In this document: one piece after another, positions 506 to 41,157 of the stretch | Layout of the letters: the number at the start of each line of letters is the position of its first letter | Numbering within the stretch: position 1 is the first letter of the stretch | Position numbers and translations under genes: made by a program | Notes under the pieces: model-generated | Told to the model about the DNA's origin: nothing | Databases searched by the model: none | Seen by the model: only the letters and a program-made list of their open reading frames with translations | Assembly (NCBI GenBank): GCA_965637545.1 | Contig: OZ281497.1 | Span: 26,908,001-26,972,000 of the forward strand | Direction: 5' to 3' | Length of the DNA: 64,000 nt | Origin: Phallusia mammillata | Taxonomy: Eukaryota

Positions 506-3500
506 AGCACTGGCATCTGTGAAGCTTACCAAAGTGAAGTATGTGGTTTGGTCCAATGATATGTCACATGTTGCACTGTTGGCTAAACACAACATTGCAA
601 TCTGCAATCGTAAACTTGAATCGCTTGCCACAATCCACGAAAATGTGCGTGTGAAGTCGGGAGCATGGGAAGAAAGTGGTGTGTTTATCTACACTACTTC
701 TAATCACATCAAATATGCTCTTACTAATGGGTTAGTTGGTTTATTTTTTTGTTTTGAGCAGTAAAAGTATTTTTATCGAATTTCCTGTTTTGAAAAACAA
801 ATTTGAAATCAGGTTTATTATTAACATAATAAACTTTTGGCTTAAACAATCAATTTTTTGATGTTCAAACAGCTTACTTTGTCCCTGTGATGTTGAGGTT
901 ATGGTCAAATATGCCTTTTTTGTCTTAATTTTATGTATTATGTAAAATGAAAATATTACTATCTGTTTTTGAAATTATTGCATTCCTCAGGGATTTTTCA
1001 CTCTTTGTTAATAACTCAGAATTTATGTCTAAAAATATGTCAGTCTTGGACAGTGAAAAACACATATAAAGGAGCTTGCATATCATCAATGTGTTTATTA
1101 TTTTACATTCCAGTGATCATGGCATCATTCGAACCCTGGACCTTCCCATCTATATAACAAGGGTTAAGGGCACAAGTGTGTATTGCTTGGATCGAGAAAC
1201 TCGTCCTCGAGTTCTTTCCATTGATCCAACAGAATTCAGATTCAAGGTTTGTATCTATGTTTTCGAAATGAGTATTTAATTGTAACAATTGGAAACTGAA
1301 TCTCATTCCAATTGCTTGCAAGAAAAGTGACATTTGCGATTAAGCAGAATTGTCTACTATATTTTTCACATTTCAATACTACTTTAAAACCCAAGAAAGA
1401 TGTACAGGTTAAATATGAGTCTTATTTTGCATAAAATTGTCTGATATACGTTACTTTTGTCAGTTTATAGTTGAGCTGAAATACTGTATTTTTTGTGAGT
1501 TTTTTAAAGACTTTTTGCAGTATTTAAATTCCTTTTCAGAAATCAGCAAATCCATTGCAGTATTTTTATTGTCTCAGTGACTTTTATTCAAAGATAACAT
1601 CGATGCTAAAATGTATTTAAAGATCGGCGTAACAGCTAAAATATAATTACACTTGATAGATGGCACTTGTGAATCGCAAATACGATGAAGTTCTACACAT
1701 GGTTCGTAACACCAAGCTGGTCGGACAATCGATCATCGCTTACTTGCAACAGAAAGGATACCCAGAAGTTGCTCTACACTTTGTCAAGGACGACAAAACA
1801 AGGTTTTCATTGGCTCTAGAGTGTGGAGATATTGAGGTAAATAATTGTATCTTGTATGAATATGAAGATTAAAATAGATTAATGAAATTATTGACAAAAC
1901 AACAAACCAAGTAGATGCAAAAAGAGACATGCTTTATTATTCAAATGTTTCTGCAAATGCTCACCCATCAACAGTGATGAAACTTATAAACAGATTAATG
2001 AAATTATGGAAGTATAAAAACGACTAAATAAAAATAATTTAATATCCACAAAAGTGTAATTGCAACTATTAAATTTTTGAACAAGTAAAACACCATAATA
2101 AACGTTATAGCATACTAACTCTATGGAATTGTTTAGGTGGCATTAGCTGCTGCAAAAGCACTTGATGACAAGCAGTGCTGGGTTGCACTTGGAGAAGTTG
2201 CACTTGCTCATGGGAACCACCAAGTGGTAGAAATGGCTTATCAGCGAACCAAGGATTTCGACAAACTCTCGTTTCTATATTTGCTCACTGGAAATCTTGA
2301 AAAGTTGAGAAAAATGATGAAAATCGGTAAGTATGTACAGACCCCTGAAGTACGCGGTTTCCATCATTTAACGCAATTAAAAAGCAGTCATTTTTGTTCT
2401 GTTATACCTTGTTGGACACTGGTTATCGTATGTTAGTAGAATAGTTGGTTTAATGCTCGGGTCAGTTAGTGAGACTGCTCGGCTAAACACAGAGCATCAA
2501 AAACAGTGATGCTCGGTACAGAGTGCTTAGATTCTTGCTCGGCTCGACCCATCAAATCAATAAACAACATCGAAATCTGTGGTTTACTATAGTTGTTGCC
2601 CTTTTTGTACGTGTCATTTGACTGTAGTGTTTCTTTTTCCAGCTGAAATCAGAAAGGATACATCAGGTCATTACCAGGCTGCTCTTTATCTCGGAGATGT
2701 AGCAGAGCGAGTAAAGGTTCTTCGTGGATGCGGACAAAAGTCGCTCGCTTATCTTACTGCTGCTACACATGGATTAGAAGAAGAAGCAGAGCAGCTCAAA
2801 GATGAAGTAGTCCCAGATATTGATCCCAGCGCAGTCCTTCTTCAGCCACCACCTCCCATCAAACAGTGTGAAGAAAATTGGCCGTTGCTAACTGTCAGCA
2901 AAGGTGGGTCCACAAAAATTTGAGCACTTCGTATAACTTGGTCACACAGCAAACTAACCTTTATAGCAGTGGTTGACAACCTTTTGCTGTGGTCTAAAAG
3001 CAAGATTCACTTTACTATTAAAACCAGAGATTAAGTGGTAAAATTGCCCACTACTTTAAAGGACAGAAACATTGTTTGGAAATGCAAAAATAAACTTCTT
3101 TTGGCGGTTTTGAATTCCTCAGAAAAATAGTTCCACAAACGAACTGTTTTGGATAAGTACGTTAAAAAATGATTGTTTGTATTTTAATTGGTCAAATTGT
3201 TGTAGACCTTGTTTGCACTGGATTCAGTAAATCTGAATTTTCACCTAATTCCAACAAAACTTGAGGTTCAAAAGATTTGTAATGTGATAAGGCTTAAACT
3301 ATTCGACTTCAGTTAATCCAGATTTTCGCCTAACCCTGAAAATTTTTTGTTTCAATTTTGTACGTGTTCACTGAGGTTTGGTGTACTGCATAATGCAGGG
3401 GTGTCAAACATGCAGTCCTCCCAAGAGTTTTTGTGTGGCTCACAAAGTAACTTTGAAAAGTGACGTGTTTTACTCAGGCTCAGGAATACCCTGTCGGAGC

Positions 3501-8322: not shown

Positions 8323-11119
8323 ATGTCCGAAGAAAATCGGGATGTGAAAAAACTGAAGGGATTCGAGTTTTGGGAGAAAACGTTGCAAAAAGCAAAACTT
8401 GTTGTTGCTCCAATGGTCGACCAGAGTGAGTTAGCGTGGAGGATGTTATCACGAAAATATGGAGCACAGCTTTGCTACACTCCGATGCTACATTCATCTG
8501 TTTTCATTCGTGATCCACAATACAGGTACAAGTTAATCTAATATAATGCTCATTTGTTCGGTCATGTCTAAAACTGCGGGCCCACTTGGATCACTTGGCC
8601 CGCCTCATGCAATTGGAAAACTGTGGGCCCGCTTCTTGCAAGTATAAAAACTGTAGCCCCACTATATATCCAGTGCTTGGCCCGCCTCTCGTATCGAAAA
8701 ACCGCGGGCCCACTATATCCTGTGCTTGTCGCCTGTCGCCTCTATCGCAAGGAAAAACTGCGGGCCCACTACATCCATTGCTTGCCGTTCAGATCTTGTC
8801 AAAATCAAAATTTAATGACATGTGACAGGTGTGTCCACTGCTTTATCAAGCCGGCCCGCAGTTTTTATACTCTTTATACCAACATCAAATTCAGTCACAG
8901 TTTTATAATTGCCAAAAATGAAACCAAAAGTTTGTAAATTAGTGCTGAATGGGCATGTTAAGTATTGGCTGGCTTTAGAGTATTCCCTTTAATTTACTAA
9001 TTGCTCATGTTTAAATGTTGCACAATTGGATCTTTAGGCTGGATGGTCTAGCATCGTGTGATGAAGATCGTCCACTTATTGTTCAGTTTTGTGGAAATAA
9101 ACCGGAAACAATTTTGGAAGCTTGCTTGTTAGCTCAGGATAAATGTGATGCAGTGGACCTTAATCTTGGTTGTCCACAGGTATTTGAAATGCCATGCTTA
9201 GCATCAAAAGTTGCAGAAAATTTAGCTATATTGTATTTAGATTGTGTTAAAATGTAAATATTTTTTACAATACTTCTTGTTTTGTTTTTCAATTTTAAAA
9301 TACTGCGATTTATATATTTCTCATAGATTTTTGATCAGATTGAAGTACAGTAATGTAATTACAATAAACTACAGTAATTACAATAAACTATAGTAATTAC
9401 AGTAAACTACAGTAATGGTGATTTAAAATAAGTTTAATACTTTTCTATAAAAGCCTATTGAAGCAAGCTCCTCTTTTCAAAAAAATATTTTATTTATGGA
9501 CAACTGATAATTCCTTTGCAGATGATTGCCAAGCGGGGAAACTATGGAGCATTCTTGGGTGAAAAATGGGAATTGGTGGAAAAGATTGTTAAAACATGCA
9601 ACGAGAAATTATCAGTGCCAATCACATGCAAGATAAGAGTTTTTACTGATATTGAGAAAACTGTTGCCTATGCTAAAATGCTGGAGAGGTATGTAAATAT
9701 TTTGTTGTTGTTTTTTGTACAATTTATTGATAGTTTAGTTTAACATAAATTTTATTTCATTTTGTTACTTACTATTGTGGTAAAATTAAACATAAAGCTC
9801 AGATTTTTCTTTTTATTATGGCACATTTTAAACCATACGATTCTCCTTGTGATGCATTAATATCAGGGACAATTTTTGCATCATTCAGGGCTGGTTGTCA
9901 GTTGCTAACTGTGCACGGTCGCACCAAGGAAATGAAAGGACCCAAAACTGGCATTGCTAGTTGGAAACACATAAAGGCTGTGAAAGATGCTGTCAAAATT
10001 CCCGTATATGCCAATGGAAATATTCAATACAAAGAAGATGTTGACAGGTAAAACGCTCTACCAACTGGGCTACAAAGAGTCACTGTTGTGCCCAAACCAC
10101 AAATGCTGTTGCCTACCTCATATGCGGCACATGTCAGCTTTGTAGTAGGGAATTTCCAGGTCCACCATTAATTAGCTAAGATGAACATACATAACATTTA
10201 TGCAGACTAGCGATCATAACACACTCATATTTAAATCACAGTACGCCTGGCTGATAATTAGGTGTTATACCAAATTGTCTGGTGGATACATGGTACCGTC
10301 CCTGTGGTGCTTATTTTTGTAGCAAGAATCGTTAACTCATTTCTTGGGTATCTTAGCGTAATTGTTATTACAATATTGATCCCTTTTTCAACCAGGTGTA
10401 TCAAAGATCTAAAAGTCGAGGGAGTTATGACAGCTGAGGGAAACCTTCACAACCCAGCAATATTTATGGGGCAACAACCAATCACATGGGAGATTTCAAG
10501 CGAGTACTTAGATTTGGTGGAAAAGTATCCATGCCCTATGTCATATGTAAGGGGACATTTGTTTAAAATCTGTCACCATGGATTACAAAAGCACACCAAT
10601 GCGAGGGATGTGTTAGCTGGGTCAAAAGACCTAAAAGACATGCGTAGGTCATTAGACATTTTACGTGAGACATGCAAGAAAGTGTGCTGGGGTGAAAATG
10701 GAGTTACCGAGGGACTACCCCACCCACACTGGATCTGCCAACCCTACGTTCGCCCCCCACCCAAACCTGACCCAAGTCGTGTTAAGGTAACCCCACCGAC
10801 AAGTCCAGATATTGGAGAAGTGTCCAGAAAAAAAATGAAAAAGTTGTTGAAACGGTGTCGAAATGCTTCGGAGCTGTCTCTGGAAAACTTGAATCCGAAT
10901 GAAAAAGCGGCAAAACTGGCTGAATGTATTGCTCAGCGACAAGCCAACAAACCAGTTTACACAAAATGCGTTCGTTGTGGAAACCCAAGCGGGAAAAACT
11001 GCATATTTATCTCGTGTAAACGTTGCTGCAAGGACAGAGCCCGAGAGCTGGAAAAGTTTTGTCAAACTCACCGAAATTTTACACCACAAGCTAATTGCAA
11101 AGACAACGTTAATTCATGA
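8323..11119 (+). CDS. DUS1L: tRNA-dihydrouridine(16/17) synthase 1-like, ~464 aa. Exons: 8323-8525, 9038-9179, 9522-9688, 9889-10047, 10396-11119
   Basis: DUS motifs [35 protein letters not shown] (catalytic Cys), [26 protein letters not shown]; C-terminal Cys cluster [17 protein letters not shown] typical of DUS1L; exon phases add up to an open frame. Confidence 0.95.
8560..8870. mobile_element. MULE-like MITE with internal tandem units, degenerate right end (DUS1L intron 1)
   Basis: Starts GGTCATGTCTAAAACTGCGGGCCC like the 35795 element; repeated AAAAC(T/C)G(C/T)GGGCCC units. Confidence 0.75.
9348..9417. repeat. Short minisatellite, ~19-nt unit (DUS1L intron 2)
   Basis: Three to four imperfect copies of CAGTAATTACAATAAACTA. 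Confidence 0.7.
10175..10280 (-). mobile_element. SINE body fragment (DUS1L intron 4)
   Basis: Reverse complement ATTTGGTATAACACC...GGCGTACTGTGATTTAAATATGAGTGTG..GATCGCTAGTCTGCAT aligns to ~7741-7850. Confidence 0.7.
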
Positions 11120-25123: not shown

Positions 25124-28100
25124 ATGGCTGCCTTGCCTCGTCGTATAATAAAGGTAAGCTTATTGTAATTTTTCACTGTTTAAACACTGTTTAAATATTT
25201 TTTGATAGAATTTTACGAATGATTTTTCCACAATTTGTTTCAGTGAACTTAATGCACTAACATGTTTTTCGCCTGTGACATAACAATGCTAGCAAAAATG
25301 CATGATTTATTTCAGGGGTTAGGCAACCTTATCTGTGTCTCGACAAACTGATATTATGACACACTGATATAAATTACAAATACATGAATATGAACTAGTA
25401 AACTGTTTGCCATGCCATGAAAAATAATTGCCGACCTTTGAGTTATTGTTAGAACATTGATCGTTTTATGTTGAACTTAGATCATATTTGCCTTTTGAAA
25501 AGGTGATATCTATGGTTCAAGGCTTAGCCACTTAGCGTATTTCATCTGCAAGTCTTTGTGCCTTTATTTCAAGTGCTTCAATTTCAAGGCATAGAAAACA
25601 GTTCCCAAATTGATGCTTTTTGCTTTGACTATAAATAATCCTGTTTTTTTTCCTGTCATTGTAGAAAATGAATAAACCTGAATCACTTTTCGTTTGATCA
25701 AGCTGGTTGTAATTTTAATGCCATGATGTTCTTTAATGCTGTTTTATTTTGTTTCAGGAAACGCAACGTCTGGTCTCAGAACCTGTACCTGGGATTCAAG
25801 CAATTCCTGATGACAATAATTTAAGACTTTTTCATGTCGTCATTGATGGACCAAAAGATGTAATGACCTATTTTAATATTATACAGTTGTTTGACTTATT
25901 CTTTTTACTATTCGACCTGTTTCATGTAATTGTTTTAAGTCACCTGTTTGGAAATGTTTGTTTGAATGCTGAAATCAATTATCTTTAGTATAAGGAACAG
26001 GCCTATTAAAGGCGTTATACAGAATCGAAGCATTCCTATATAACAAGGCGTATGCTAGAAAATTACTTGTTTACTGGTTAATCTGGTGATCCCCTACTTT
26101 GAAGCTGACATGTGCAACATACGAGGCAGGCAATGGTGCTTGTGATTCAAGTTTTGTCGCGCTCACCACTGAGCCAGTGTAGTTCATTTGGTAGAATGTG
26201 AGTCCCTGCTGTGGGTTCGAATCCCATGGCTACATTTTTTCAGCCTACGCCTTGGCATATGGGGATGCTTGATGACTGGCTGATTTGGTATAATGCAGGG
26301 TTATTCAATGGGGGCAATATCGCCTGTGAAATGGACCTTGCGTGTTGTAGTAGCAATTAAATTAGGTTTTAGCTGTTAACTGAAGCTTTCGTGATCCTGG
26401 CTGAATCTAACCGCCCACGTCTGCTCAAAAAGCAGAACTTTTATACAAATAACAATTTCATAGGTGGGCGATTTGGAGACAGTGCATTAATAAGGGGGCG
26501 ATTGAGCCAAAAAGGTTGAAGACCCCGGGTATGATGCCTTTAATAGGCCTGGTATATCATGATTCATATATGAGTGTGGTGCGATTGATGGTCTGCAGAC
26601 GCTTCAGGGCTGAACCCATTAATTTAGGTTTATCTTAACATTCTAGTTTTGTTTCTGTTTATTCCAGTCCCCATTTGAAAATGGAGCTTTCAAACTGGAG
26701 TTGTTTCTACCAGCAGAATATCCGATGGCTGCTCCTAAAGTTCGATTTTTAACTAAAATTTATCATCCAAACATTGATAAGCTTGGCAGAATTTGCCTGG
26801 ATATTCTTAAAGGTAAGATTTCAAAATATTAACTTGCTTTTTGACCAATCCAAGTCCTATTTTTTGTGAACATTTCTCTATGTTGTTTCATTTAACTTAC
26901 AGTCAGCAAAAGCGAGTAGGCGTTGTAATATTGACTAATTGATGTGTCAGCTAGTTCTGAAAAATATTTCTTAATCATTTGTTTGCGTAAAAGTTGTGAT
27001 AACGTAATGAAATTGCCGTTTTATTTTGTTATTTCAAAGTTTTGACAGTTCATTGTATTTTACCTCTGAAAGAGTCCTAAAAATATTTATGATTTTTGAA
27101 TTTTTGCGATATTGAGTTGGGGTACCTTTGCTTGATGAGAGAAAACATAGCAAAACAATTGCATTAGAACAATTATCAAGCTGTGAATAGCTTCACAATG
27201 TCAAACATTATTCATGTTTTTGAATGTTTGAACCAAAAAAGAAACTAAAAACAACTATACATACCTGTGTGTTTGGTTGATCAACAGTTTTATGTAATGT
27301 GTGTCAATTAAACGTGCTTTAAATCTATAGATAAATGGAGTCCGGCTTTACAAATGAGAACTGTACTTCTTTCAATACAAGCTCTGCTTAGTGCTCCAAA
27401 TCCGGACGATCCACTAGAAAATGAGGTTGCAGAAAAATGGAAAGAGGCTGAAGCTGTTGCAATAAAAACAGGTAAGATTTATCTGTTTTTTCTGTATACA
27501 TGCATCATATTGGTTATTACTTTACAACAGTGGTTCTCAAAGTATGGGTCGCGCAGGGTCAAAAAATGGGTCGCTCTATGGTGATTCAATTCTGCCTAAA
27601 TGAACTGTTTTCATTTATTTTTCAAGTATTTTCAATTCCTAGTCATGACTGAATTATTGTATCATAGGCATTTTATGTGGCTTTATCTTCGTAACCTTGG
27701 AGTATTGCATCATAAATAAGGGTTTTCTGAGTGTTTAGATGGCACCCAGCTACAGTACTACCATAGCGAAATACAGCCTCACTCGACCACGTTGTACGGC
27801 AAAATGAACCAATCATTACAACATACAGACAATAGCCTTCCAATATTCTGTTACGCACATGGCGCTTGTAGGCTATTAGCATGGGGAATAATAGGAGGTT
27901 AATCATGCGAAACTAAACTTGGAATGTAACAGTTAGCATTCAAGGACAAGTAGGTATTCATTAGTTATATACAAGAAATAAAAAATACATATTTTGATGT
28001 TTGAGGCTTGGGTCGCAACATGTTCATAAAGCTCAGATTTGGGTCGCGCACAAAAAAGTTTGAGAACCACTGCTTTACAAGCTTGTAGTAAAAAAATTAG

Positions 28101-28485
28101 ATTGAATTTGGCAAATATTTCATGTTTTAGAAATTTACCTATCTGAGTTTTAAAATTTTTGCAAACAGACCTAAGCACAAGGGCACATGTGTCTTTGCTC
28201 CCAGCATAACCAATCGCTAAGCTTTTTTATGCAATTACCGTTTTATGCCATTGTATGGACAATTTTTTTTCTTAACAAGTAGGTTTGGATGACATTTGCA
28301 ATGCATCATATAAAATTCAATGGATTATACCTTATATATTAATAAGGTTTATCTGTAATGGCAAATGGCATCTTTTAAAAAACCACCTGATTGTGTTTAT
28401 TATTTTCGAACAGCATCTCATGAAAGGCTATTTTTTTACAGCTAAGGAATGGACAAGAAAATACGCCGTACCAGATTGCAAGTAA
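25124..28485 (+). CDS. UBE2N: Ubiquitin-conjugating enzyme E2 N (Ubc13), 153 aa. Exons: 25124-25153, 25758-25859, 26668-26812, 27331-27471, 28442-28485
   Basis: [59 protein letters not shown] (active-site Cys), [15 protein letters not shown]; GT-AG introns in phase. Confidence 0.96.
25998..26065 (-). mobile_element. Inverted SINE fragment in UBE2N intron 2
   Basis: CAGGCCTATTAAAGGCGTTATAC...AAGCATTCCTATATAACAAGGCGTATGCT is the reverse complement of the SINE body at ~26230-26551 without the nested MITE. Confidence 0.7.
26173..26615 (+). mobile_element. tRNA-headed SINE interrupted by a hAT MITE (UBE2N intron 2)
   Basis: A-box-like TAGTTCATTTGGTAGA and B-box GGTTCGAATCCC (26214-26225), then the shared SINE body. 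Confidence 0.75.
26296..26528. mobile_element. hAT (Buster-type) MITE nested in the SINE
   Basis: Degenerate termini CAGGGTTATTCAA / TTGAAGACCCCGG; TSD GTATAATG / GTATGATG. Confidence 0.75.
27528..28072. mobile_element. hAT (Buster-type) MITE in UBE2N intron 4
   Basis: CAGTGGTTCTCAAA / TTTGAGAACCACTG with perfect TSD CTTTACAA. Confidence 0.92.
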
Positions 28486-31217: not shown

Positions 31218-35051
<3,834 letters not shown>

Positions 35052-35509
35052 GGTGTCGGTGATTTTCCGTAGATTATGGAATTGAAAGTGACTTGCAGGA
35101 ACAGCAATATCGCTAAAACAAAACTTTTGTTTCTTTCTCGATCCGCTTTCTCGAACTTAATTACCAAAAACAAAACAAACCTTCAACTCAACTCAACTCA
35201 ACTCATGAAGTTCATCAGCCACAAACGCATTCATCCATGACGGTGAATCGTCGTGGTTCACTCATTTTTCACGGCAGAAAAAATAAAAGTTTGCAGCGAA
35301 ACTTTACTCTTACGGGGAAAGCAAAATTTGCCGGATTCGGACATAAAATGTGAAACAATGTAGCTCAGATTTTCTAAGCGTTCATCGTTAAGGTAAAGTG
35401 GTTCGCGTAATACGTTTTAGAAGTGCTTTGCGATTTCTGAACTTCGAAATCAGACAATACAGAATTTGTATGACATCCGTTTCACTATTTTTGTGCCGTT
35501 GAACTTGCC
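35052..35509. promoter_or_regulatory. Probable bidirectional promoter between PDHB and the zinc-finger gene
   Basis: Divergent start codons at 35051 (-) and 35510 (+) are only 458 bp apart; the interval contains a (CAACT)n tract at ~35184-35205. Confidence 0.6.
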
Positions 35510-38500
35510 ATGAATTCTGAAGCGGAGAAAATTCTACAGAAATGGAAAGACAAGGTTTTAATTGTTTTTATGTTTTTTTCATTGCAATTTTGATTGAATA
35601 GGCTATTGTTTTTTTTATGCAATGACCCAAACTTGTTCATTGTTATGTATTTTTCGATATATTTGAAACTGTTTTAGTGTGCCTGTAGTATATTTACTGT
35701 AATCTTGACCTAGAATTGTGTCAAACTTTATTTAATAGTTGACATTATAACATTCTAACTTAAATTATTATCTGATAAATGACTGTTTCAAAACGGTCAC
35801 GTCTAAAACTGCGGGCCCACTTGGATCACTTGGCCCGCTTGGCCCAGCACTTCATGCAATTGAAAAACTGCGGGCCCACTATATCCAGTGCTTGTCGCGT
35901 CTCTCGTAAGTACAAAAACTGCGGGCCCACTATATCCAGTGCTTGTCGCGTCTCTTGCAAGGAAAAACTGCGGGCCCACAATATCCAGTGCTTGTCGCGT
36001 CTCTTGCAAGGAAAAACTGCGGGCCCACAATATCCATTGCTTGGCCCGTCTCTCGCAGGACAAAACGGGCCAAGTGCTGGGCCAAGTGGGCCAAGCGGGC
36101 CCGCAGTTTTAGACATGACCCTTTCAAAACTGCACATACATTTTGAGATCACAAGTTTTTAATGATGCTGTTTATCATTTTTTCTATCTAATGTTAAAGT
36201 TTCCCATCCCAACCAGGCATCCGACAGTAATCCAGTGAAGGAACTGCAATGTCGCCTATGTTCAGAAACTTTTCATGGGGAAGGAATGTTTGTTGAGTCT
36301 CTGATTCACTTACAAACATCTCATTCTGGGTACGAAGAAACTTTTAAAAGAAAACTGAATAGTATCATATGCAGAATTTTTTTGATATCAAAATTGTCCA
36401 TTTTAAATGCACAATAAAAAATAACATCTCCAAAAGCTCAGTTAAAAGTATTAATCAACAAAATTTATACAAAAAAAAATCAACAAAATTATGTTTTATG
36501 ATATTAGAAAAATAATGACACCAGTTGCAAAAGGAAGAAACAAATGGCCCTGTGACTGTTTTCATGTTTTTTTTATTTTACTTCATTAAAAAATAAATTC
36601 CTAGTTCTAAGCTAAACAAAAACAAATCAAAAATGTATTGAATAAGTCACATTGTCATATCTTACTATTTTACATGAAGCCATTTTTTTACACATCACAT
36701 TAAAAACTATGTTCATAGGACTTTGCATTATTCGCATGATATATATATGTCACAATTCCGCAAAAACACACACAAATGATTGAATCTTTCTTAGGGTTCT
36801 GTTGTTAGTGTTATGAAATATCGGTTTTGATATCACATTTTAATGGGGCATTCCAGTTAGTACTGATACCCGGGCTAGTAACATCAGGTCATAGAAACAG
36901 ATACAAACACAAAAATCAATACGAACTCTTTCAGTTGCATATCCTGTGTTATATATAACTGTCATTTATGTGCTGGTGTTAATTTGTAATGTATTTTATA
37001 GGTATTTTGAGTCCCAGCAGCACAGCATTTCTAGTTCTACGGAAGTGGACCACATAGCAACTGCTGAGGAGAATTCGAATACACTTGTTAGCAGCTCATC
37101 GAGAGATGAAGCATTGCAGATGAGTAATGCTGATGAAATATGTGTGGTGGAAAAGATGAATCAAACCACTCAGACCAACAGGAAAAGTCAGCCCACAGAT
37201 ATGTGTACTCAAACAGGTACGTTTAAAGGTTTTGATTGTGTTAGTTTGTATTGTTTGTTACTTGTTGTATTCTACATGCTGGAGCAAATCACAGCACATT
37301 AATTAATATCATTTTGCCATAATAATTTTTTTTTAATTTGAGCACATTTTGACCACTCTGTATTATTTAGATTAAATTACAGCGTACTGTAATTACAGTT
37401 ATTAACATTCATGCCATAATAAGAAAAAAATATAATTTGAGCACATTTTGATCAATCTATATTATTTAATAGAAAAATATATTGATATGTAGCTTTGTTT
37501 GTGTTTTGTTATACATGTATCGTATTTATACTTCTAGACTTTGCAATTCCTTTACCTATTCCTGAACCTCTGAAAAGATTTTTGTGCTTATCAGGTGGGT
37601 AAAACAATACTACTTAATTTTTGTGGTGGAAATTAACTTTTAAGCACAACCAATGCTCGAATTTGTTTTGAAAAATATCGTTAATACATATTCTATGGCA
37701 TTTTTTTATATGTGTGACCTAAGCTTACAAGTCAAAGCAATCAAAATGCCTAGTTCGCTCTTACACATCAATTTTGTGCTATCAACAAATTTGCGTTCTC
37801 ATGTATAAAATGGCCTGAACGATTTCCCTTTACAACTTCCTAAATTTTATTTCTTGTGGTCAATTTACCCGTTGTGGTAACTACCCTTGACAAGCAAACT
37901 TATTGCTGGTAACTGGCAAACATTAGTCTATACTAGTTGAAGTCAGGGCTTGGTAATCTGTACATAATTTTTTTTATCTAGATTGTATAGATATTGTATA
38001 AAAAAAAACAGATTAACAAAAAAACAGTATTTAAATGATAGGAGACCATTTAGTTGACAGAAAAAAATGGTGTTTATTTAAAACAAGTTACACTTTAAAT
38101 GTGTTTACCAAAGTTTAGCTCATATAGTTTATTTAACTAACTGTTTTTGGTCACAAAAATAATTGCTGATTTTTATCTTGGGGTAGAATATTTGATTTTT
38201 GTAGCCTTAATGTTGTTGATTAGAGAATCCAGGCAACTGTAGACCTTACCTTTGCCTCATATGCAACAAACCAGTTTTGAACCTGAAGATAGCAGTGATG
38301 CATTTAAGGAAAAGGCATAATATTTCACTCAGAAGTGATGCAAAAAGAATACAAGGTTTGTATTTGCCCCTGTTATGTGGTGACATTGTGTTTGATTTGA
38401 TTCATGTAATTGATTCATTAAACAAGATAACCTAGATGGTTTTTGCTCGAACTGGTTGTTGAAAAAAAGATAAACAAAATGTACTAAGTATATATTGTTA

Positions 38501-40218
38501 TCCCTTAGAATTGGATTGGTTTTTGCATTGCCCTATGCATGTCTTATCAAATACTATGATCACAAGATAATTGCATTTGGGCAAAGCAGAATCTTGACAA
38601 AAAAGTTTGACTCAAAGCTTATCAAATTGTATATTTATCAAAATATGAAACTTTGCATGCAGAAACATAGTAGAGTGTATGTGTATTGTATGGCCGAAGT
38701 GAGTAAAATCCATCCAAATGCATAACCAGAAGTTGTTTCTGTATTGTGATGGTACGAATTCTAACTAAAGTCCTTATGAGTCTTAATTTAAACTTTCCTG
38801 CGTTGCCATGTATAGGCTACCTTATTTTTTTTAGACCACTTTAACTTGGAGTAGTCTATTGTAGCCGTGCATGAAAGGTTTATTACAGGTTTGTGCAACA
38901 TTGCGGGCTTTGACCTAAAACGTGGGGTTATCACGTACGCAGTGCACCACGATAATAATAAGTTAAAACCTAATCAAAAATGTTACTTACAGCACCAGCT
39001 AATGGAAGTCCTTTAAAACTCGACACCCTAACAAGCGCGAAGGTTAAGATCCGCAAAACGGCGCGCAAGAGCACCACCGCAAGATTGTCGCTCCAGCGTT
39101 CAACTTCGGTTGGGACGGGACAACTTGTACAACAAGTCTTAAACACAATGCCAAGTTCGCCGGAATCCCACTCCAGTACGAATCGTGACGTAGCAATCGC
39201 CATTATGACGTCACGATCAAAAGCTCACGTGATACAGAGTTCAAGCGACGACGGCTCAGATGATCTCATGAACTTGTTCGTTCCTAAGAAAAAGTCGGCT
39301 CTGTCTGGTAATGAAACGGAAACTTCGAAAAACGGATCGCATTCGTCAGACGAAAAGGTCCGAAGTCTTTCGGCCGAAAAATCGACCACTTTTAAGAGGT
39401 TTTATGGAGAGTCAAAGCATCTTTCGCCGTTAAAGCCTTCTAGCAGTAGCACGTCTGATGAAAGTTCACCGAATCCCGTAACCGTTTCGGCAAAGAAGGC
39501 GACCACACCACAAAAAGCAAAGAAAAAGATAATTCAGTCCTTCTGTGGTGAAGGGATGAACCGTCATCAGCAAACTGTAGAAAAACGAGCCATGTTTTTG
39601 GAACAACTAAAAGAGAGGCGGAAAAATAGACCAGGAAAAAATAATAATTTCAAAGTCAAGAAAAAATTCGTGTCACCAAAGAAACAAACCCCGAAATCAC
39701 CCGCCAGAAAAACTGGCTTTGAATGGAAAAGTATTGAATATAACTCCACTTGTAATAGGTTAGCCGAGAAGTCATCAGTCCCAAAGAAAACTCAATCTAC
39801 CACTGCCAACACAACGCCTCCAGCCAGCCCCGAAACTTCCACACCCATGGAAACCTCACCACCAAAATCTAAAAGTACCGACAGGGAAATCCCCAAAACG
39901 AAGAACACGGCTCGCAAAACGGCCCGCCCCCCTAAGTCGCGCACCCCTAGCGATGACAGTGGCTCGATGGACATTAACCAAATTCTCGGCAACAGTCTTT
40001 TCGTTACAACGAAACCGAGTGATGCGGAACGTGACGTGGTATCGCCGGATATTTTCGAACAAAGCAAAATTGTTTCGCGCACATCTCCGTCAGTGACCTC
40101 ACATTCGCATAGTGACGTCAAAGTGAAGCGCCAAACGAGCCGAAAGACAACGAGAAGCAAACTGACGTCCACATCGTTACTTGATGACGTCAAAAGGGTT
40201 GCAGAAAATGGACGATGA
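35510..40218 (+). CDS. Unrecognised C2H2 zinc-finger protein, ~595 aa: two spaced fingers plus a long basic Ser/Thr/Lys-rich tail. Exons: 35510-35554, 36217-36329, 37002-37216, 37538-37594, 38224-38355, 38993-40218
   Basis: Phase-compatible GT-AG chain. Finger 1 LQCRLCSETFHGEGMFVESLIHLQTSH (Cx2C-x15-Hx4H); finger 2 PYLCLICNKPVLNLKIAVMHLRKRH (Cx2C-x12-Hx4H). The last exon is the 412-codon ORF 38980-40218, entered at TTACTTACAG|CA in the required phase 1. The exon 2 acceptor is the weakest part of the model. Confidence 0.72.
35795..36121. mobile_element. MULE-like MITE with four ~49-bp internal tandem units (zinc-finger gene intron 1)
   Basis: GGTCACGTCTAAAACTGCGGGCCC / GGGCCCGCAGTTTTAGACATGACCC termini; 9-bp TSD TTTCAAAAC. 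Confidence 0.88.
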
Positions 40219-40504
40219 CGTGTTTCAAACGGCACGGAATTAAAGCGAAAATTCAATGCAAGTTAGTTGTGGAATTGCCTACTCAGCGAAATTTTGCTTA
40301 TTCTTGCCAGTTTCAACCCTATACATTATACTGTTTTCTGTTGTGTTTTTTACAGTCTCAGGTTGACAACTTTTCATGATTAACATTTTTCGCTTCCTAA
40401 CTAATTGTTCCATCTGCAATTTACCACGGCGTTCTTTTCCGGCATTACTTCAACAGCAAACCGGTGTCAAGCCGACTTGTCGATTTTGATACGCCCTATG
40501 TCTT

Positions 40505-40519
40505 GAGAGAGAGAGAGAG
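40505..40519. repeat. (GA)n microsatellite in the probable 3' UTR of the zinc-finger gene
   Basis: GAGAGAGAGAGAGAG directly visible, upstream of AATAAA at ~40568. Confidence 0.85.
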
Positions 40520-41157
40520 TATCAAATTTTATATATTTGGTAATTTCCGATGCCAAAGTCGAAGGATGAATAAATGCAACTAAAAATTCAAAAAAATCAA
40601 TTACGCCGAAAAGTTTACTTTACCTTGCTTAACGACAGCACTTTTTTACACCACATTTCTATAATATAACTAAAACCTAAATTTGGACAAAAAAAATGTA
40701 AAAACCTACACAAAAATGGTTCTCATATTTTGTCACACTATTGTGGATTGATATCTAACTATATCGTCGATTTGTAGTTTAAACTTTAAACGTTTTGTAT
40801 GGATCGATCTGTTATTGTGACGAATATCTACGCTATAGCATGCTGGCATCTTGCAATAGTCTCCCAATAATGTGATGTGACTATAAGCCTGCAGTAACCT
40901 TATATAGCCAATCATTTCCTGATAGTTAAACCCCAAATTACTATTCGTTGTTTTTTTGCCTTTGATTTTTTTCGTTTTTTTACCTTTCCATTTCGCCATG
41001 CTACTGAGCTATTTTATATTTTTGGACTGGGTGAGATTTTGCGTGCTACCTCAGCTGAAATATTGTCCCTATGTGCAAATCACGTGTTTTCAGTTAACCA
41101 ATCAGGCTGCTTTAACGCCTAATGGCGAATTCTAACTGAGGTTTGGCCATAATGAAT

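What the first reader, a model, noticed from the sequence alone, without database searches (positions are those of the whole stretch)
38993..40218. Orphan zinc-finger protein whose tail carries several histone H3K9-mimic motifs
Seen: the last exon encodes RKTARKSTT (39058-39075), SPARKTG (~39703), NTARKTARP (~39907) and KRQTSRKTT (~40126) in an otherwise low-complexity basic tail. Established: the H3 tail reads [10 protein letters not shown], and ARK(S/T) mimics in G9a/GLP, WIZ, LIG1 and ATF7IP are methylated by G9a/GLP and read by HP1, CDYL, MPP8 or UHRF1; WIZ and ZNF644 are spaced-C2H2 partners of G9a/GLP. Inference: this may be a lineage-specific multivalent histone-mimic scaffold or decoy for the H3K9 methylation machinery. 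I recognise no ortholog.
Basis: partly seen in the sequence, partly recalled or inferred. Interest (0 to 1): 0.75.

Follow-up and report, generated by a model that had tools for sequence, protein, structure and literature searches.

The report
Ascidian zinc-finger protein with H3-tail mimics
A transcribed sea-squirt (Phallusia mammillata) gene encodes a two-zinc-finger protein whose disordered tail carries three copies of the histone H3 'TARKS' segment; these copies are the best-conserved parts of the protein across ascidians, which makes it a strong but biochemically untested candidate for a new histone-mimic chromatin adaptor.

Summary
Spliced RNA contigs from four studies support the exons, and the 595-aa product equals a UniRef entry of Phallusia mammillata.

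- **Enrichment:** ARK[S/T] occurs 3 times against 0.044 expected from composition (0 of 5000 shuffles).
- **Relatives:** the protein is not a strict orphan. An exhaustive phmmer search found relatives only in ascidians: Ciona intestinalis LOC100186737, C. savignyi, Clavelina lepadiformis and an unnamed close relative of Phallusia.
- **Conservation:** overall identity is only about 23-35%. Even so, the two most conserved 6-residue windows of the whole protein are RKTARP and TARKST, ahead of the zinc-finger cores. A third C-terminal [S/A/G]RK[S/T] island is also conserved.
- **Exception:** the SPARKTG motif is not conserved.
- **H3 likeness:** the islands match Phallusia's own H3 residues 4-11 at 6-7 of 11 positions (K.TARKST; KQTARK in Ciona) and lie in predicted disorder.
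- **Machinery:** the genome encodes EHMT/G9a-, SETDB1- and SUV39-like writers and HP1- and CDYL-like chromodomains.

Best reading (about 0.5): a lineage-restricted, multivalent H3K9-like mimic on a C2H2 protein. Methylation and reader binding are untested. WIZ membership is not supported.

The parts
35294..35554 (+). Exon 1: 5'UTR plus the start codon at 35510 (MNSEAEKILQKWKDK). It lies about 115 bp from the first exon of the divergent Transketolase_C (PDHB-like) gene.
   Evidence: RNA contig pieces and the GT..AG joint 35554/36217 in 4 runs; translation
36217..36329 (+). Exon 2, holding zinc finger 1 (36250-36324, C-x2-C-x15-H-x4-H, CRLC...HLQTSH)
   Evidence: Cys/His invariant in orthologs; AF2 pLDDT 84-90 with beta-beta-alpha elements; zf-WIZ only 12.7 bits
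37002..37216 (+). Exon 3: disordered S/T-rich linker, poorly conserved. It contains a non-conserved QTNRKS.
37538..37594 (+). Exon 4 (57 nt): DFAIPLPIPEPLKRFLCLS, a conserved PIPE..(K/Q)R(F/Y) segment that forms an extra strand before finger 2
   Evidence: present in the RNA contigs of all 4 runs; nearly identical exon in relative L011; P131 and P133 invariant
38224..38355 (+). Exon 5, holding zinc finger 2 (38253-38318, C-x2-C-x12-H-x4-H, CLIC...HLRKRH)
   Evidence: Y152 C154 C157 N163 K165 H170 K173 H175 invariant; AF2 pLDDT 86-92
38993..40218 (+). Exon 6 coding part: 407-aa disordered S/K/T-rich tail with the stop codon (3'UTR runs to at least 40800)
   Evidence: no Pfam family; ESM Atlas model mean pLDDT 0.42
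39058..39075 (+). Island 1: TARKST (residues 210-215, K213), identical to H3 residues 6-11. TARK is invariant in all five orthologs.
   Evidence: (window score 0.77, second of the whole protein)
39703..39714 (+). ARKT within SPARKTG (residues 425-428): real but not conserved, and absent even in the closest relative
   Evidence: rank 82 of 402 tail windows
39907..39930 (+). Island 2: TARKTARP (residues 493-500, K496). A-R-K-x-x-R-P is invariant in all five orthologs (consensus K-x-[TAG]-A-R-K-[ST]-[TA]-R-P).
   Evidence: (window score 0.83, top of the whole protein)
40138..40155 (+). Island 3: SRKTTR (residues 570-575, K572) near the C-terminus. Conserved as [S/A/G]RK[S/T]: SRKST in the relative, SARKST plus SRKST in Clavelina, GRKSAP in Ciona.
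   Evidence: (0.53, sixth non-overlapping window of the protein)

Best explanation
The gene encodes a nuclear, ascidian-restricted protein. It has two folded C2H2-type zinc fingers near the N-terminus and a long disordered tail.

The tail's selected elements are three short copies of the histone H3 tail around lysine 9 (basic-x-T-A-R-K-S/T). The most likely mechanism is H3K9 mimicry.
1. The lysines K213, K496 and K572 are methylated by the organism's H3K9 methyltransferases. The EHMT/G9a ortholog is the prime candidate, because its minimal substrate is TARKSTG with the Arg essential.
2. The methylated ARK(S/T) motifs then dock chromodomain readers (HP1, a CDYL-like protein, the SUV39 chromodomain).
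3. The neighbouring Ser/Thr offers a phospho-methyl switch, as at H3S10.
4. With three motifs and two fingers, the protein would act as a multivalent adaptor that concentrates H3K9 writers and readers wherever the fingers bind. Alternatively, if it is soluble, it would buffer them.

Shown here: gene structure, transcription, motif enrichment, motif conservation, H3 likeness, disorder, and presence of writers and readers in the genome.

Inferred: methylation, reader binding, nuclear and DNA targeting, and whether the protein is a scaffold or a decoy.
For: - **Enrichment:** ARK[ST] 3 against 0.044 expected. Enrichment is also seen in each ortholog.
- **Conservation:** relatives share only 23-35% identity, and the tail's mean column identity is 0.137. 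Yet RKTARP (0.83) and TARKST (0.77) are the two most conserved windows of the whole protein, above the zinc-finger cores (0.65 and 0.60). Outside the fingers, 9 of the 13 invariant columns are T210 A211 R212 K213 and A494 R495 K496 R499 P500.
- **H3 likeness:** the islands match Phallusia's own H3 residues 4-11 at 6-7 of 11 positions, including a basic residue at the K4 position and Thr at the T6 position. Ciona has KQTARK, identical to H3 residues 4-9.
- **The invariant Ala:** Ala at position -2 and a strict R-K order are what G9a and chromodomains require. Importins and basophilic kinases do not need them. (Sources: PMC8541646; PMC2175347, where ATKS is not methylated but ARKT is and then binds HP1; bioRxiv 10.1101/2023.12.21.572340, where the MPP8 chromodomain prefers ARK[S/T]me3.)
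- **Accessibility:** the motifs lie in predicted disorder.
- **Machinery in the same genome:** an EHMT ortholog (EHMT1 3.9e-26), SETDB1- and SUV39-like pre-SET exons, an HP1 chromoshadow and chromodomain, and a CDYL/HP1-class chromodomain.
- **Expression:** the gene is single copy and expressed in many runs.
Against: - No biochemical datum exists for this protein or any ortholog; it is uncharacterised everywhere.
- Island 2 carries an invariant R-P at +3/+4 that H3K9 lacks (H3 has G-G), which hints at a partner other than, or besides, H3 readers.
- Ciona island 1 is ARKR, so there is no Ser/Thr at +1. Ciona islands 2 and 3 look as much like H3K27 (KAARK, RKSAP) as like H3K9.
- Island 3 has S or G rather than A at -2 in most species.
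- Only five sequences from three ascidian lineages were available. One of them (P0002) is a gene call that reads through introns.
- No conserved PxVxL motif for HP1 chromoshadow binding is present.
Confidence: 0.5

Rival explanations
1. The islands are conserved phospho-regulatory motifs for basophilic kinases (R-K-S/T and R-K-x-T, as for Aurora B, PKA or MSK acting on H3S10/T11). The resemblance to H3 reflects shared kinases and phosphatases, not lysine methylation.
For: Every island has R at -2 or -3 of a Ser/Thr (RKS, RKT, RKST). Ciona island 1 (ARKRIS) keeps an R-x-S site while losing the +1 Ser. The tail is S/T-rich with SP/TP sites.
Against: Kinase consensus does not explain the invariant Thr-Ala before the Arg, nor the invariant Lys (never Arg). 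The phospho-acceptor itself varies (S, T, A, R at +1/+2) while A-R-K does not. The two readings are compatible, because a phospho-methyl switch would use both.
Confidence: 0.15
2. The islands are simply basic patches, either nuclear localisation signals or DNA- and nucleosome-contacting clusters, kept by selection for charge.
For: Each island sits in a K/R cluster that fits K-[KR]-x-[KR]: KIRKTARK, KTKNTARK, KRKGARK in Ciona. A zinc-finger protein needs an NLS.
Against: Selection for charge tolerates K/R swaps and shifts in register. Here the exact T-A-R-K and A-R-K-x-x-R-P are invariant, including the uncharged Ala, Thr and Pro, while neighbouring basic residues vary. Three copies of the same specific word are not needed for import.
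Confidence: 0.13
3. The motifs mimic H3K27 rather than H3K9.
For: H3K9 and H3K27 share ARKS. Ciona island 2 (KGARKS, KAARKT) and island 3 (GRKSAPS) score best against the K27 context KAARKSAP.
Against: In Phallusia, its close relative and Clavelina, the islands are K9-like (T at -3, ST at +1/+2; K.TARKST at 6-7 of 11). Island 1 of Ciona is KQTARK, identical to H3 residues 4-9. PRC2 components were not examined here.
Confidence: 0.1
4. The motifs are chance words in a K/R/S/T-rich low-complexity tail and have no function.
For: The tail is compositionally biased (S 16.5%, K 12.3%, T 10.8%). The motif was picked post hoc. One of the four (SPARKTG) is indeed not conserved.
Against: 0 of 5000 and 0 of 20000 shuffles reach the observed count. 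ARK[ST].RP has an expectation of roughly 2e-4 per tail (my estimate from the composition), yet it is present at the same place in all five orthologs. The islands are the top-ranked conserved windows of the protein.
Confidence: 0.02

Closest known systems
Histone-mimic ARK(S/T) motifs of the H3K9 writer complexes (G9a K165/K239 ARKT, GLP ARKT, ATF7IP/mAM ARKT, SETDB1 H3K9-like motifs)
   Same: Same core word A-R-K-S/T in a disordered region. In the known cases the lysine is methylated by G9a/GLP as efficiently as H3 and then binds HP1 and MPP8 chromodomains (PMC2175347; bioRxiv 10.1101/2023.12.21.572340; bioRxiv 10.1101/2025.10.22.683908). The match here extends to H3 residues 4-11.
   Different: The known mimics sit in the enzymes or their cofactors, usually as one or two copies. 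Here three conserved copies sit on a protein with no enzymatic domain, and the family is found only in ascidians. No methylation data exist.
WIZ and ZNF644
   Same: A C2H2 protein with widely spaced fingers and long disordered linkers. Finger 1 gives a sub-threshold zf-WIZ match (23.2 bits in C. savignyi, 12.7 in Phallusia; cut-off 27).
   Different: Only two fingers. There is no significant sequence relation to WIZ or ZNF644 in an exhaustive phmmer search or in the PDB profile search. No zf-WIZ match occurs anywhere in the Phallusia genome at E<=1.
   Same: T-A-R-K word in a disordered segment of a non-H3 protein that is used as a methyl-lysine docking site.
   Different: These are single motifs in proteins with other main functions. 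The readers differ, and UHRF1-type domains were not examined here.
Histone H3 N-terminal tail of Phallusia itself ([18 protein letters not shown]...[12 protein letters not shown])
   Same: TARKST is identical to H3 residues 6-11, and the basic residue at the K4 position is kept.
   Different: The motifs are internal and have no free N-terminus. Island 2 is followed by R-P instead of G-G. There is no histone fold.

Membership tests
H3K9-like histone-mimic motif (G9a/GLP substrate, chromodomain ligand) | Core A-R-K-[S/T], with Arg directly before the target Lys and a small residue at -2 | tested here: met
   ARKS (211-214), ARKT (425-428) and ARKT (494-497). Island 3 is SRKT. ARK is invariant in islands 1 and 2 of all five orthologs.
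H3K9-like histone-mimic motif (G9a/GLP substrate, chromodomain ligand) | Extended likeness to the minimal G9a site H3 6-11/12 (TARKSTG; PMC8541646) | tested here: met
   TARKST is identical to H3 6-11 in Phallusia island 1, in the relative's islands 1 and 2, and in Clavelina island 2. There are 6-7 matches over 11 positions against the organism's own H3. Gly12 is not matched.
H3K9-like histone-mimic motif (G9a/GLP substrate, chromodomain ligand) | Motif lies in an accessible, disordered segment | tested here: met
   AF2 pLDDT is below 50 for residues 182-225. The whole-protein ESM Atlas model has mean pLDDT 0.42. No Pfam domain is found in the tail.
H3K9-like histone-mimic motif (G9a/GLP substrate, chromodomain ligand) | Motif conserved among orthologs above its surroundings | tested here: met
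   Window scores are 0.83 and 0.77 against a tail mean of 0.137, ranks 1 and 2 of the protein. Island 3 scores 0.53. SPARKT is not conserved.
H3K9-like histone-mimic motif (G9a/GLP substrate, chromodomain ligand) | Writers and readers present in the same organism | tested here: met
   EHMT ortholog L001; SETDB1- and SUV39-like pre-SET exons; HP1 chromoshadow and chromodomain; CDYL/HP1-class chromodomain L020.
H3K9-like histone-mimic motif (G9a/GLP substrate, chromodomain ligand) | The lysine is methylated by an H3K9 methyltransferase | not testable with these tools
   Needs an in vitro methylation assay or mass spectrometry.
H3K9-like histone-mimic motif (G9a/GLP substrate, chromodomain ligand) | Methyl-dependent binding by an HP1, CDYL or MPP8 chromodomain | not testable with these tools
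   Needs a pull-down or ITC with methylated peptides. The one complex prediction gave no verdict (see Tried and rejected).
WIZ / ZNF644 | zf-WIZ (PF23015) domains above the gathering score | tested here: not met
   12.7 bits (Phallusia) and 23.2 bits (C. savignyi) against a cut-off of 27. Only the C-x2-C knuckle part of the profile is matched.
WIZ / ZNF644 | Detectable sequence homology to WIZ or ZNF644 | tested here: not met
   phmmer over 1.84 billion representatives returned only four ascidian relatives at E<=0.001.
WIZ / ZNF644 | Many (five or more) widely spaced C2H2 fingers | tested here: not met
   Two fingers only.
Classical C2H2 zinc finger | C-x2-4-C-x12-H-x3-5-H pattern with a beta-beta-alpha fold | tested here: met
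   Finger 2 is C-x2-C-x12-H-x4-H. Finger 1 has a longer x15 spacer. Both have invariant Cys/His and are modelled with strands plus a helix at pLDDT 84-92. Pfam and PDB matches are generic and sub-threshold.
H3K27 mimics acting on PRC2 (JARID2 K116, PALI1, EZHIP) | K27-like context (A-A-R-K-S-A-P) around the lysine | tested here: inconclusive
   Ciona islands 2 and 3 fit K27 slightly better (KAARK, RKSAP). Phallusia, its relative and Clavelina fit K9.

The most novel reading that the evidence does not exclude
An ascidian-specific zinc-finger protein that works as a 'portable H3 tail'. It would carry three trans-acting copies of H3 residues 4-11 which, once methylated, recruit and bridge HP1- and CDYL-type readers and H3K9 writers at the sites its fingers bind. 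It would thereby seed or buffer heterochromatin independently of nucleosomal H3. This would be a multivalent histone-mimic adaptor in which the mimic motifs, not a catalytic or folded domain, are the main selected feature.
Probability: 0.4. Interest if true: 0.75.

Novelty: new member of a known kind. Interest (0 to 1): 0.58.

Why it matters
Histone mimicry by ARK(S/T) motifs is known mostly from mammalian H3K9 writer complexes and from viral proteins, usually as single motifs whose selective importance is hard to judge.

In this family the mimic motifs are the most strongly conserved elements of a whole protein, above its zinc fingers, and they come in three copies. The family occurs in ascidians, where embryos are routinely injected and imaged (Phallusia, Ciona).

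That gives a clean, testable system for three questions:
- whether multivalent non-histone 'H3 tails' organise heterochromatin factors;
- how methyl and phospho switches work off the nucleosome;
- how such adaptors arise in a fast-evolving lineage.

If the motifs turn out not to be methylated, their extreme conservation still marks an unknown, specific binding partner worth finding.

Tried and rejected
- **Complex prediction.** I paired the single-exon CDYL/HP1-class chromodomain of the same genome (L020:1441-1668:+) with residues 195-230 of the protein. The score was 0.15 against a mark of 0.34, and the controls were not run. The tool gave no verdict, so this is evidence neither for nor against binding. 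Peptides and unmethylated lysine are outside what the test was validated on.
- **Word-index protein searches.** The tail alone found only the protein itself. The five-sequence alignment found only the protein and its close relative, because low-complexity words swamped the 8000 candidates. Ciona residues 20-215 found only Ciona. These blanks say little. The exhaustive phmmer run is the basis for 'ascidians only'.
- **Pfam.** There was no family for the tail and only sub-threshold hits for the fingers: zf-WIZ, Spin-doc zf, zf-C2H2_2, zf-BED, DUF629. I rejected membership in WIZ and SPINDOC.
- **Other sequence and structure look-ups.** A PDB profile search with the N-terminal alignment gave only generic C2H2 hits with E above 0.01. 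The ESM Atlas look-alikes were generic C2H2 clusters.
- **Synteny.** The Clavelina ortholog lies between ECSIT and PSS genes, not next to the PDHB-like gene. This is uninformative. The Ciona protein was not on record for a locus look-up.
- **Other short motifs.** I found no conserved PxVxL (HP1 chromoshadow) or RVxF (PP1) motif.
- **14-3-3 mode-1 reading of RKSTRP.** I considered this and set it aside, because from memory of the ELM pattern Arg at +1 of the phospho-site is disfavoured. It was not tested.
- **Earlier scan notes and papers.** The earlier findings held nothing for this place or these words. No paper mentions LOC100186737.
Full report
**What is there**

The window is eukaryotic, about 36% G+C. 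The ORF 38980-40218 on the + strand is preceded by a ttacag acceptor at 38992/38993.

A run search found about 20 holders. Many small runs hold about 42% of the sampled words of 36000-40600, which is the share expected of the exons. I laid contigs of four such runs, from four studies, on 34900-40800. In every run one contig joins six exons through GT..AG introns:
- 35294-35554
- 36217-36329
- 37002-37216
- 37538-37594
- 38224-38355
- 38993 to at least 40600-40800

The runs are only guessed to be RNA. The intron-less joined form is the evidence for transcription. The 57-nt fourth exon cannot be seen by eye.

Joining the exons gives an ATG at 35510 and a 595-aa product. It is identical, letter for letter, to a UniRef/nr entry of Phallusia mammillata named 'Uncharacterized protein LOC100186737'. 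The organism is therefore an ascidian (Phlebobranchia, Ascidiidae). The gene is single copy in this genome.

It lies head to head with a Transketolase_C gene that is pyruvate dehydrogenase E1-beta-like. That gene's first exon ends at 35180, about 115 bp from exon 1.

**Check of the observation**

- TARKST, 39058-39075
- ARKT, 39703-39714
- TARKTARP, 39907-39930
- SRKTTR, 40138-40155

Composition does not explain them.
- In the 407-aa tail (S 16.5%, K 12.3%, T 10.8%, R 6.4%, A 5.2%), ARK[ST] is seen 3 times against 0.044 expected.
- [AS]RK[ST] is seen 4 times against 0.18, and TARK[ST] 2 times against 0.003.
- No shuffle of 5000 reaches the observed count for any of these three.
- Shuffling within 40-residue blocks, which keeps local composition, gives 0.045 expected and 0 of 20000.

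By my own estimate, using typical proteome residue frequencies recalled from memory, P(3 or more) is about 1e-5 for a tail like this. Even with a post hoc choice of motif over a proteome, that leaves the count unusual.

**Anatomy**

There are two zinc fingers.
- Finger 1 is C27-x2-C30-x15-H46-x4-H51.
- Finger 2 is C154-x2-C157-x12-H170-x4-H175.

All ligand residues are invariant in the orthologs. An AlphaFold2 model of residues 1-225, built with the ortholog alignment, gives:
- an N-terminal helix;
- finger 1 at pLDDT 84-90;
- finger 2 at pLDDT 86-92, with an extra strand contributed by the exon-4 segment PIPE..KRF;
- pLDDT below 50 for the linker 58-125 and for 182-225, which holds island 1.

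The ESM Atlas model of the whole protein has mean pLDDT 0.42. Pfam finds nothing in the tail and only sub-threshold generic hits on the fingers. A PDB profile search finds only generic C2H2 fingers at E above 0.01.

**Relatives**

An exhaustive phmmer search of 1.84 billion cluster representatives gave four relatives at E<=0.001. All are ascidian:
- Ciona intestinalis LOC100186737 (416 aa), with a second Ciona form at 91% identity;
- C. savignyi H2YMD0 (395 aa);
- Clavelina lepadiformis (622/679 aa; Aplousobranchia);
- an unnamed 430-aa gene call on a Logan contig.

That Logan contig is genomic. Its gene call reads through two introns. It carries a nearly identical 57-nt exon (DFAIPLPIPEPLRRFLCLS), so it comes from a close relative of Phallusia.

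The protein is therefore not a strict orphan, but nothing outside ascidians was detected. Identity to the Phallusia protein is 35, 23, 23 and 24%.

**The decisive test: conservation**

I used the five-species alignment. Twenty-three columns are invariant.
- Ten belong to the fingers.
- Of the other thirteen, nine are T210 A211 R212 K213 and A494 R495 K496 R499 P500.
- K572 and R575 lie in island 3.

I scored every 6-residue window by mean pairwise column identity. The protein's two best windows are RKTARP (0.83) and TARKST (0.77). These are ahead of the zinc-finger cores HLRKRH (0.65) and YLCLIC (0.60). SRKTTR (0.53) is sixth. The tail mean is 0.137. SPARKT ranks 82 of 402 tail windows and is missing even from the close relative (KSP---KSFRW), so it is a lineage-specific extra or chance copy.

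The island sequences are as follows.

| Species | Island 1 | Island 2 | Island 3 |
|---|---|---|---|
| Phallusia | IRKTARKSTT | KNTARKTARPPK | TSRKTTRSK |
| close relative | IRNTARKSTW | KNTARKSTRPSK | NSRKSTRSR |
| Ciona intestinalis | KQTARKRI | KGARKSTRPH | TGRKSAPSK |
| C. savignyi | KQTARKRI | KAARKTTRPNK | model ends before this point |
| Clavelina | KRTARKSV | KKTARKSTRPEK | SARKSTRKLTSRKST |

Each ortholog is individually enriched. ARK[ST] is 2 against 0.047 in the relative and 3 against 0.042 in Clavelina. ARK is 2 against about 0.09 in Ciona.

A word such as ARK[ST].RP has an expectation near 2e-4 per tail (my estimate from the composition). It occurs at the same place in all five, so alignment artefact is not a tenable explanation.

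**Likeness to H3**

I took H3 from the organism's own gene array. Its tail is [34 protein letters not shown].

I aligned each R-K of the orthologs without gaps to the R-K of K9, K18 and K27.
- Islands 1 and 2 of Phallusia, its relative and Clavelina fit K9 at 6-7 of 11 positions (K.TARKST). A basic residue sits at the K4 position and Thr at the T6 position.
- Ciona island 1 is KQTARK, identical to H3 residues 4-9.
- Ciona island 2 (K.ARKS, KAARK) and island 3 (RKSAP) fit K27 slightly better.

**Machinery**

The same genome has four pre-SET loci.
- One has as its best solved relatives EHMT1 (3.9e-26) and EHMT2.
- Two look like SETDB1 and SUV39. That is my reading of the translations. The SUV39-like locus has a chromodomain exon beside it.
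- One is SETMAR.

There is an HP1 gene, with a chromoshadow exon and a chromodomain first exon 2 kb upstream. There is also a complete single-exon chromodomain whose best solved relatives are CDYL, CBX5, CDYL2, Rhino and MPP8.

**Mechanism**

Established knowledge:
- G9a needs the Arg next to the Lys, prefers Ala before it, and has TARKSTG as its minimal site (PMC8541646).
- ARKT peptides of G9a, GLP and mAM are methylated as well as H3. ATKS is not. G9a K239me3 binds HP1 (PMC2175347).
- The MPP8 chromodomain binds trimethylated H3K9-like peptides of ATF7IP, GLP, G9a and SETDB1 as well as or better than H3K9me3, and prefers ARK[S/T] (bioRxiv 10.1101/2023.12.21.572340).
- A loose R-K pattern alone is very common, found in 8230 human proteins (PMC10611923). 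It is therefore the extended, conserved match that matters here.

The invariance of Thr-Ala-Arg-Lys, including the uncharged Thr and Ala, fits the requirements of these writers and readers. Charge-based functions or kinase consensus fit less well.

I therefore take H3K9-type mimicry as the most likely mechanism (about 0.5). The three lysines would be methylated. The methyl marks would dock chromodomain proteins. The adjacent Ser/Thr would allow a phospho switch. The two fingers would tether the assembly.

Whether the protein recruits (scaffold) or titrates (decoy) cannot be told from sequence.

Points against a pure H3K9 mimic:
- the invariant R-P after island 2;
- ARKR in Ciona island 1;
- the K27-like flavour of the Ciona islands;
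- S or G at -2 in island 3.

**Rivals**

- Basophilic-kinase phospho-motifs: 0.15. This is compatible with a methyl-phospho switch.
- NLS or basic patches: 0.13.
- An H3K27/PRC2-type mimic: 0.10.
- Chance: 0.02.

**Comparison and novelty**

The protein works like the known ARK(S/T) histone mimics. Its domain logic resembles WIZ and ZNF644, which are spaced C2H2 proteins tied to G9a/GLP.

Membership in WIZ fails on three counts:
- zf-WIZ scores 12.7-23.2 bits against a cut-off of 27;
- the protein has only two fingers;
- there is no detectable homology.

No zf-WIZ match occurs in the genome at all.

I file the protein as a new member of a known kind: a new, lineage-restricted candidate histone-mimic protein. 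It is unusual in having three copies and in the mimic motifs being the most conserved part of the protein.

**Limits**

- Five sequences from three ascidian lineages (Ciona; Phallusia with its relative; Clavelina).
- One sequence is a gene model with read-through introns, and one model is probably truncated at the C-terminus.
- Alignment of disordered tails is uncertain outside the islands.
- There is no biochemical evidence.
- The one complex prediction gave no verdict (see Tried and rejected).

Noticed in passing
window 35862-36066: A 49-bp tandem repeat (4.1 copies, 91% matches) lies in intron 1 of the gene. Short RNA-run contigs with loose ends match parts of it, so it probably belongs to a dispersed repeat family that is transcribed elsewhere.
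   Followed up: partly
window 31218-35180, minus strand: A Transketolase_C gene (pyruvate dehydrogenase E1-beta-like by my reading) is spliced on the minus strand, with an 83-nt CT..AC intron at 34944-35026. Its first exon ends at 35180, about 115 bp from exon 1 of the zinc-finger gene, which suggests a short bidirectional promoter.
   Followed up: partly
window ~25749-28485, plus strand: Exons of a ubiquitin-conjugating enzyme (UQ_con, 29.6 bits). The peptide looks UBE2N-like from memory.
   Followed up: partly
window 10262-11119 and 2579-2923, plus strand: A 285-aa open frame has a Cys-rich C-terminal part, and a 114-aa open frame also stands out. Neither has a Pfam family at E<=0.001. They may be large exons of other genes.
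   Followed up: no
window 37538-37594 and L011:~262-318: The 57-nt exon 4 (DFAIPLPIPEPLKRFLCLS) is almost identical in the relative's genomic contig, and its PIPE..(K/Q)R(F/Y) core is kept in Ciona and Clavelina. In the AF2 model it forms an extra strand packed on finger 2, so finger 2 may be an extended, non-classical module.
   Followed up: partly
window 37158-37175 (residues 110-115, QTNRKS): A fifth H3-like word (T.QT.RKS, 6 of 11 matches to H3K9 but with Asn in place of Ala) lies in the linker exon. It is not conserved in the orthologs.
   Followed up: yes
tail residues ~370-385 and ~520-545 (window ~39540-39585 and ~39990-40065): Two further weakly conserved tail segments: an (I/V).....RH(Q/S/A) segment and an F.(S/T)..S...F segment (Ciona LLNMFQSTSSTKEF, Phallusia NSLFVTT...SPDIFEQS). 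They may be additional short linear motifs.
   Followed up: no
G000:C6:14.29-14.43 Mb and contigs C21, C38, C57, C93, C257, C261 (L012-L019): Histone genes stand in long tandem arrays with periods of about 5.0 and 6.2 kb. At least 50 identical H3-scoring copies were listed.
   Followed up: no
L003 (G000:C4:18844140-18847352), minus strand 985-1815: A single-exon 277-aa open frame holds complete pre-SET, SET and post-SET domains. Its best solved relative is SETMAR (5e-63), so this is a SETMAR-like methyltransferase.
   Followed up: partly
L021 (G000:C7:2947425-2950550) against L026 (G000:C3): A second locus encodes a chromodomain segment that shares KKIVKGKIQYLIKWKGFS with the HP1 gene on C3. 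It is a likely HP1 paralog or partial copy.
   Followed up: no
window 39502 and 39816: Two variants in RNA contigs fall within the CDS. A>G at 39502 changes Thr358 to Ala in the non-conserved tail, and G>C at 39816 is synonymous (Thr462). No variant falls in the ARK islands.
   Followed up: yes
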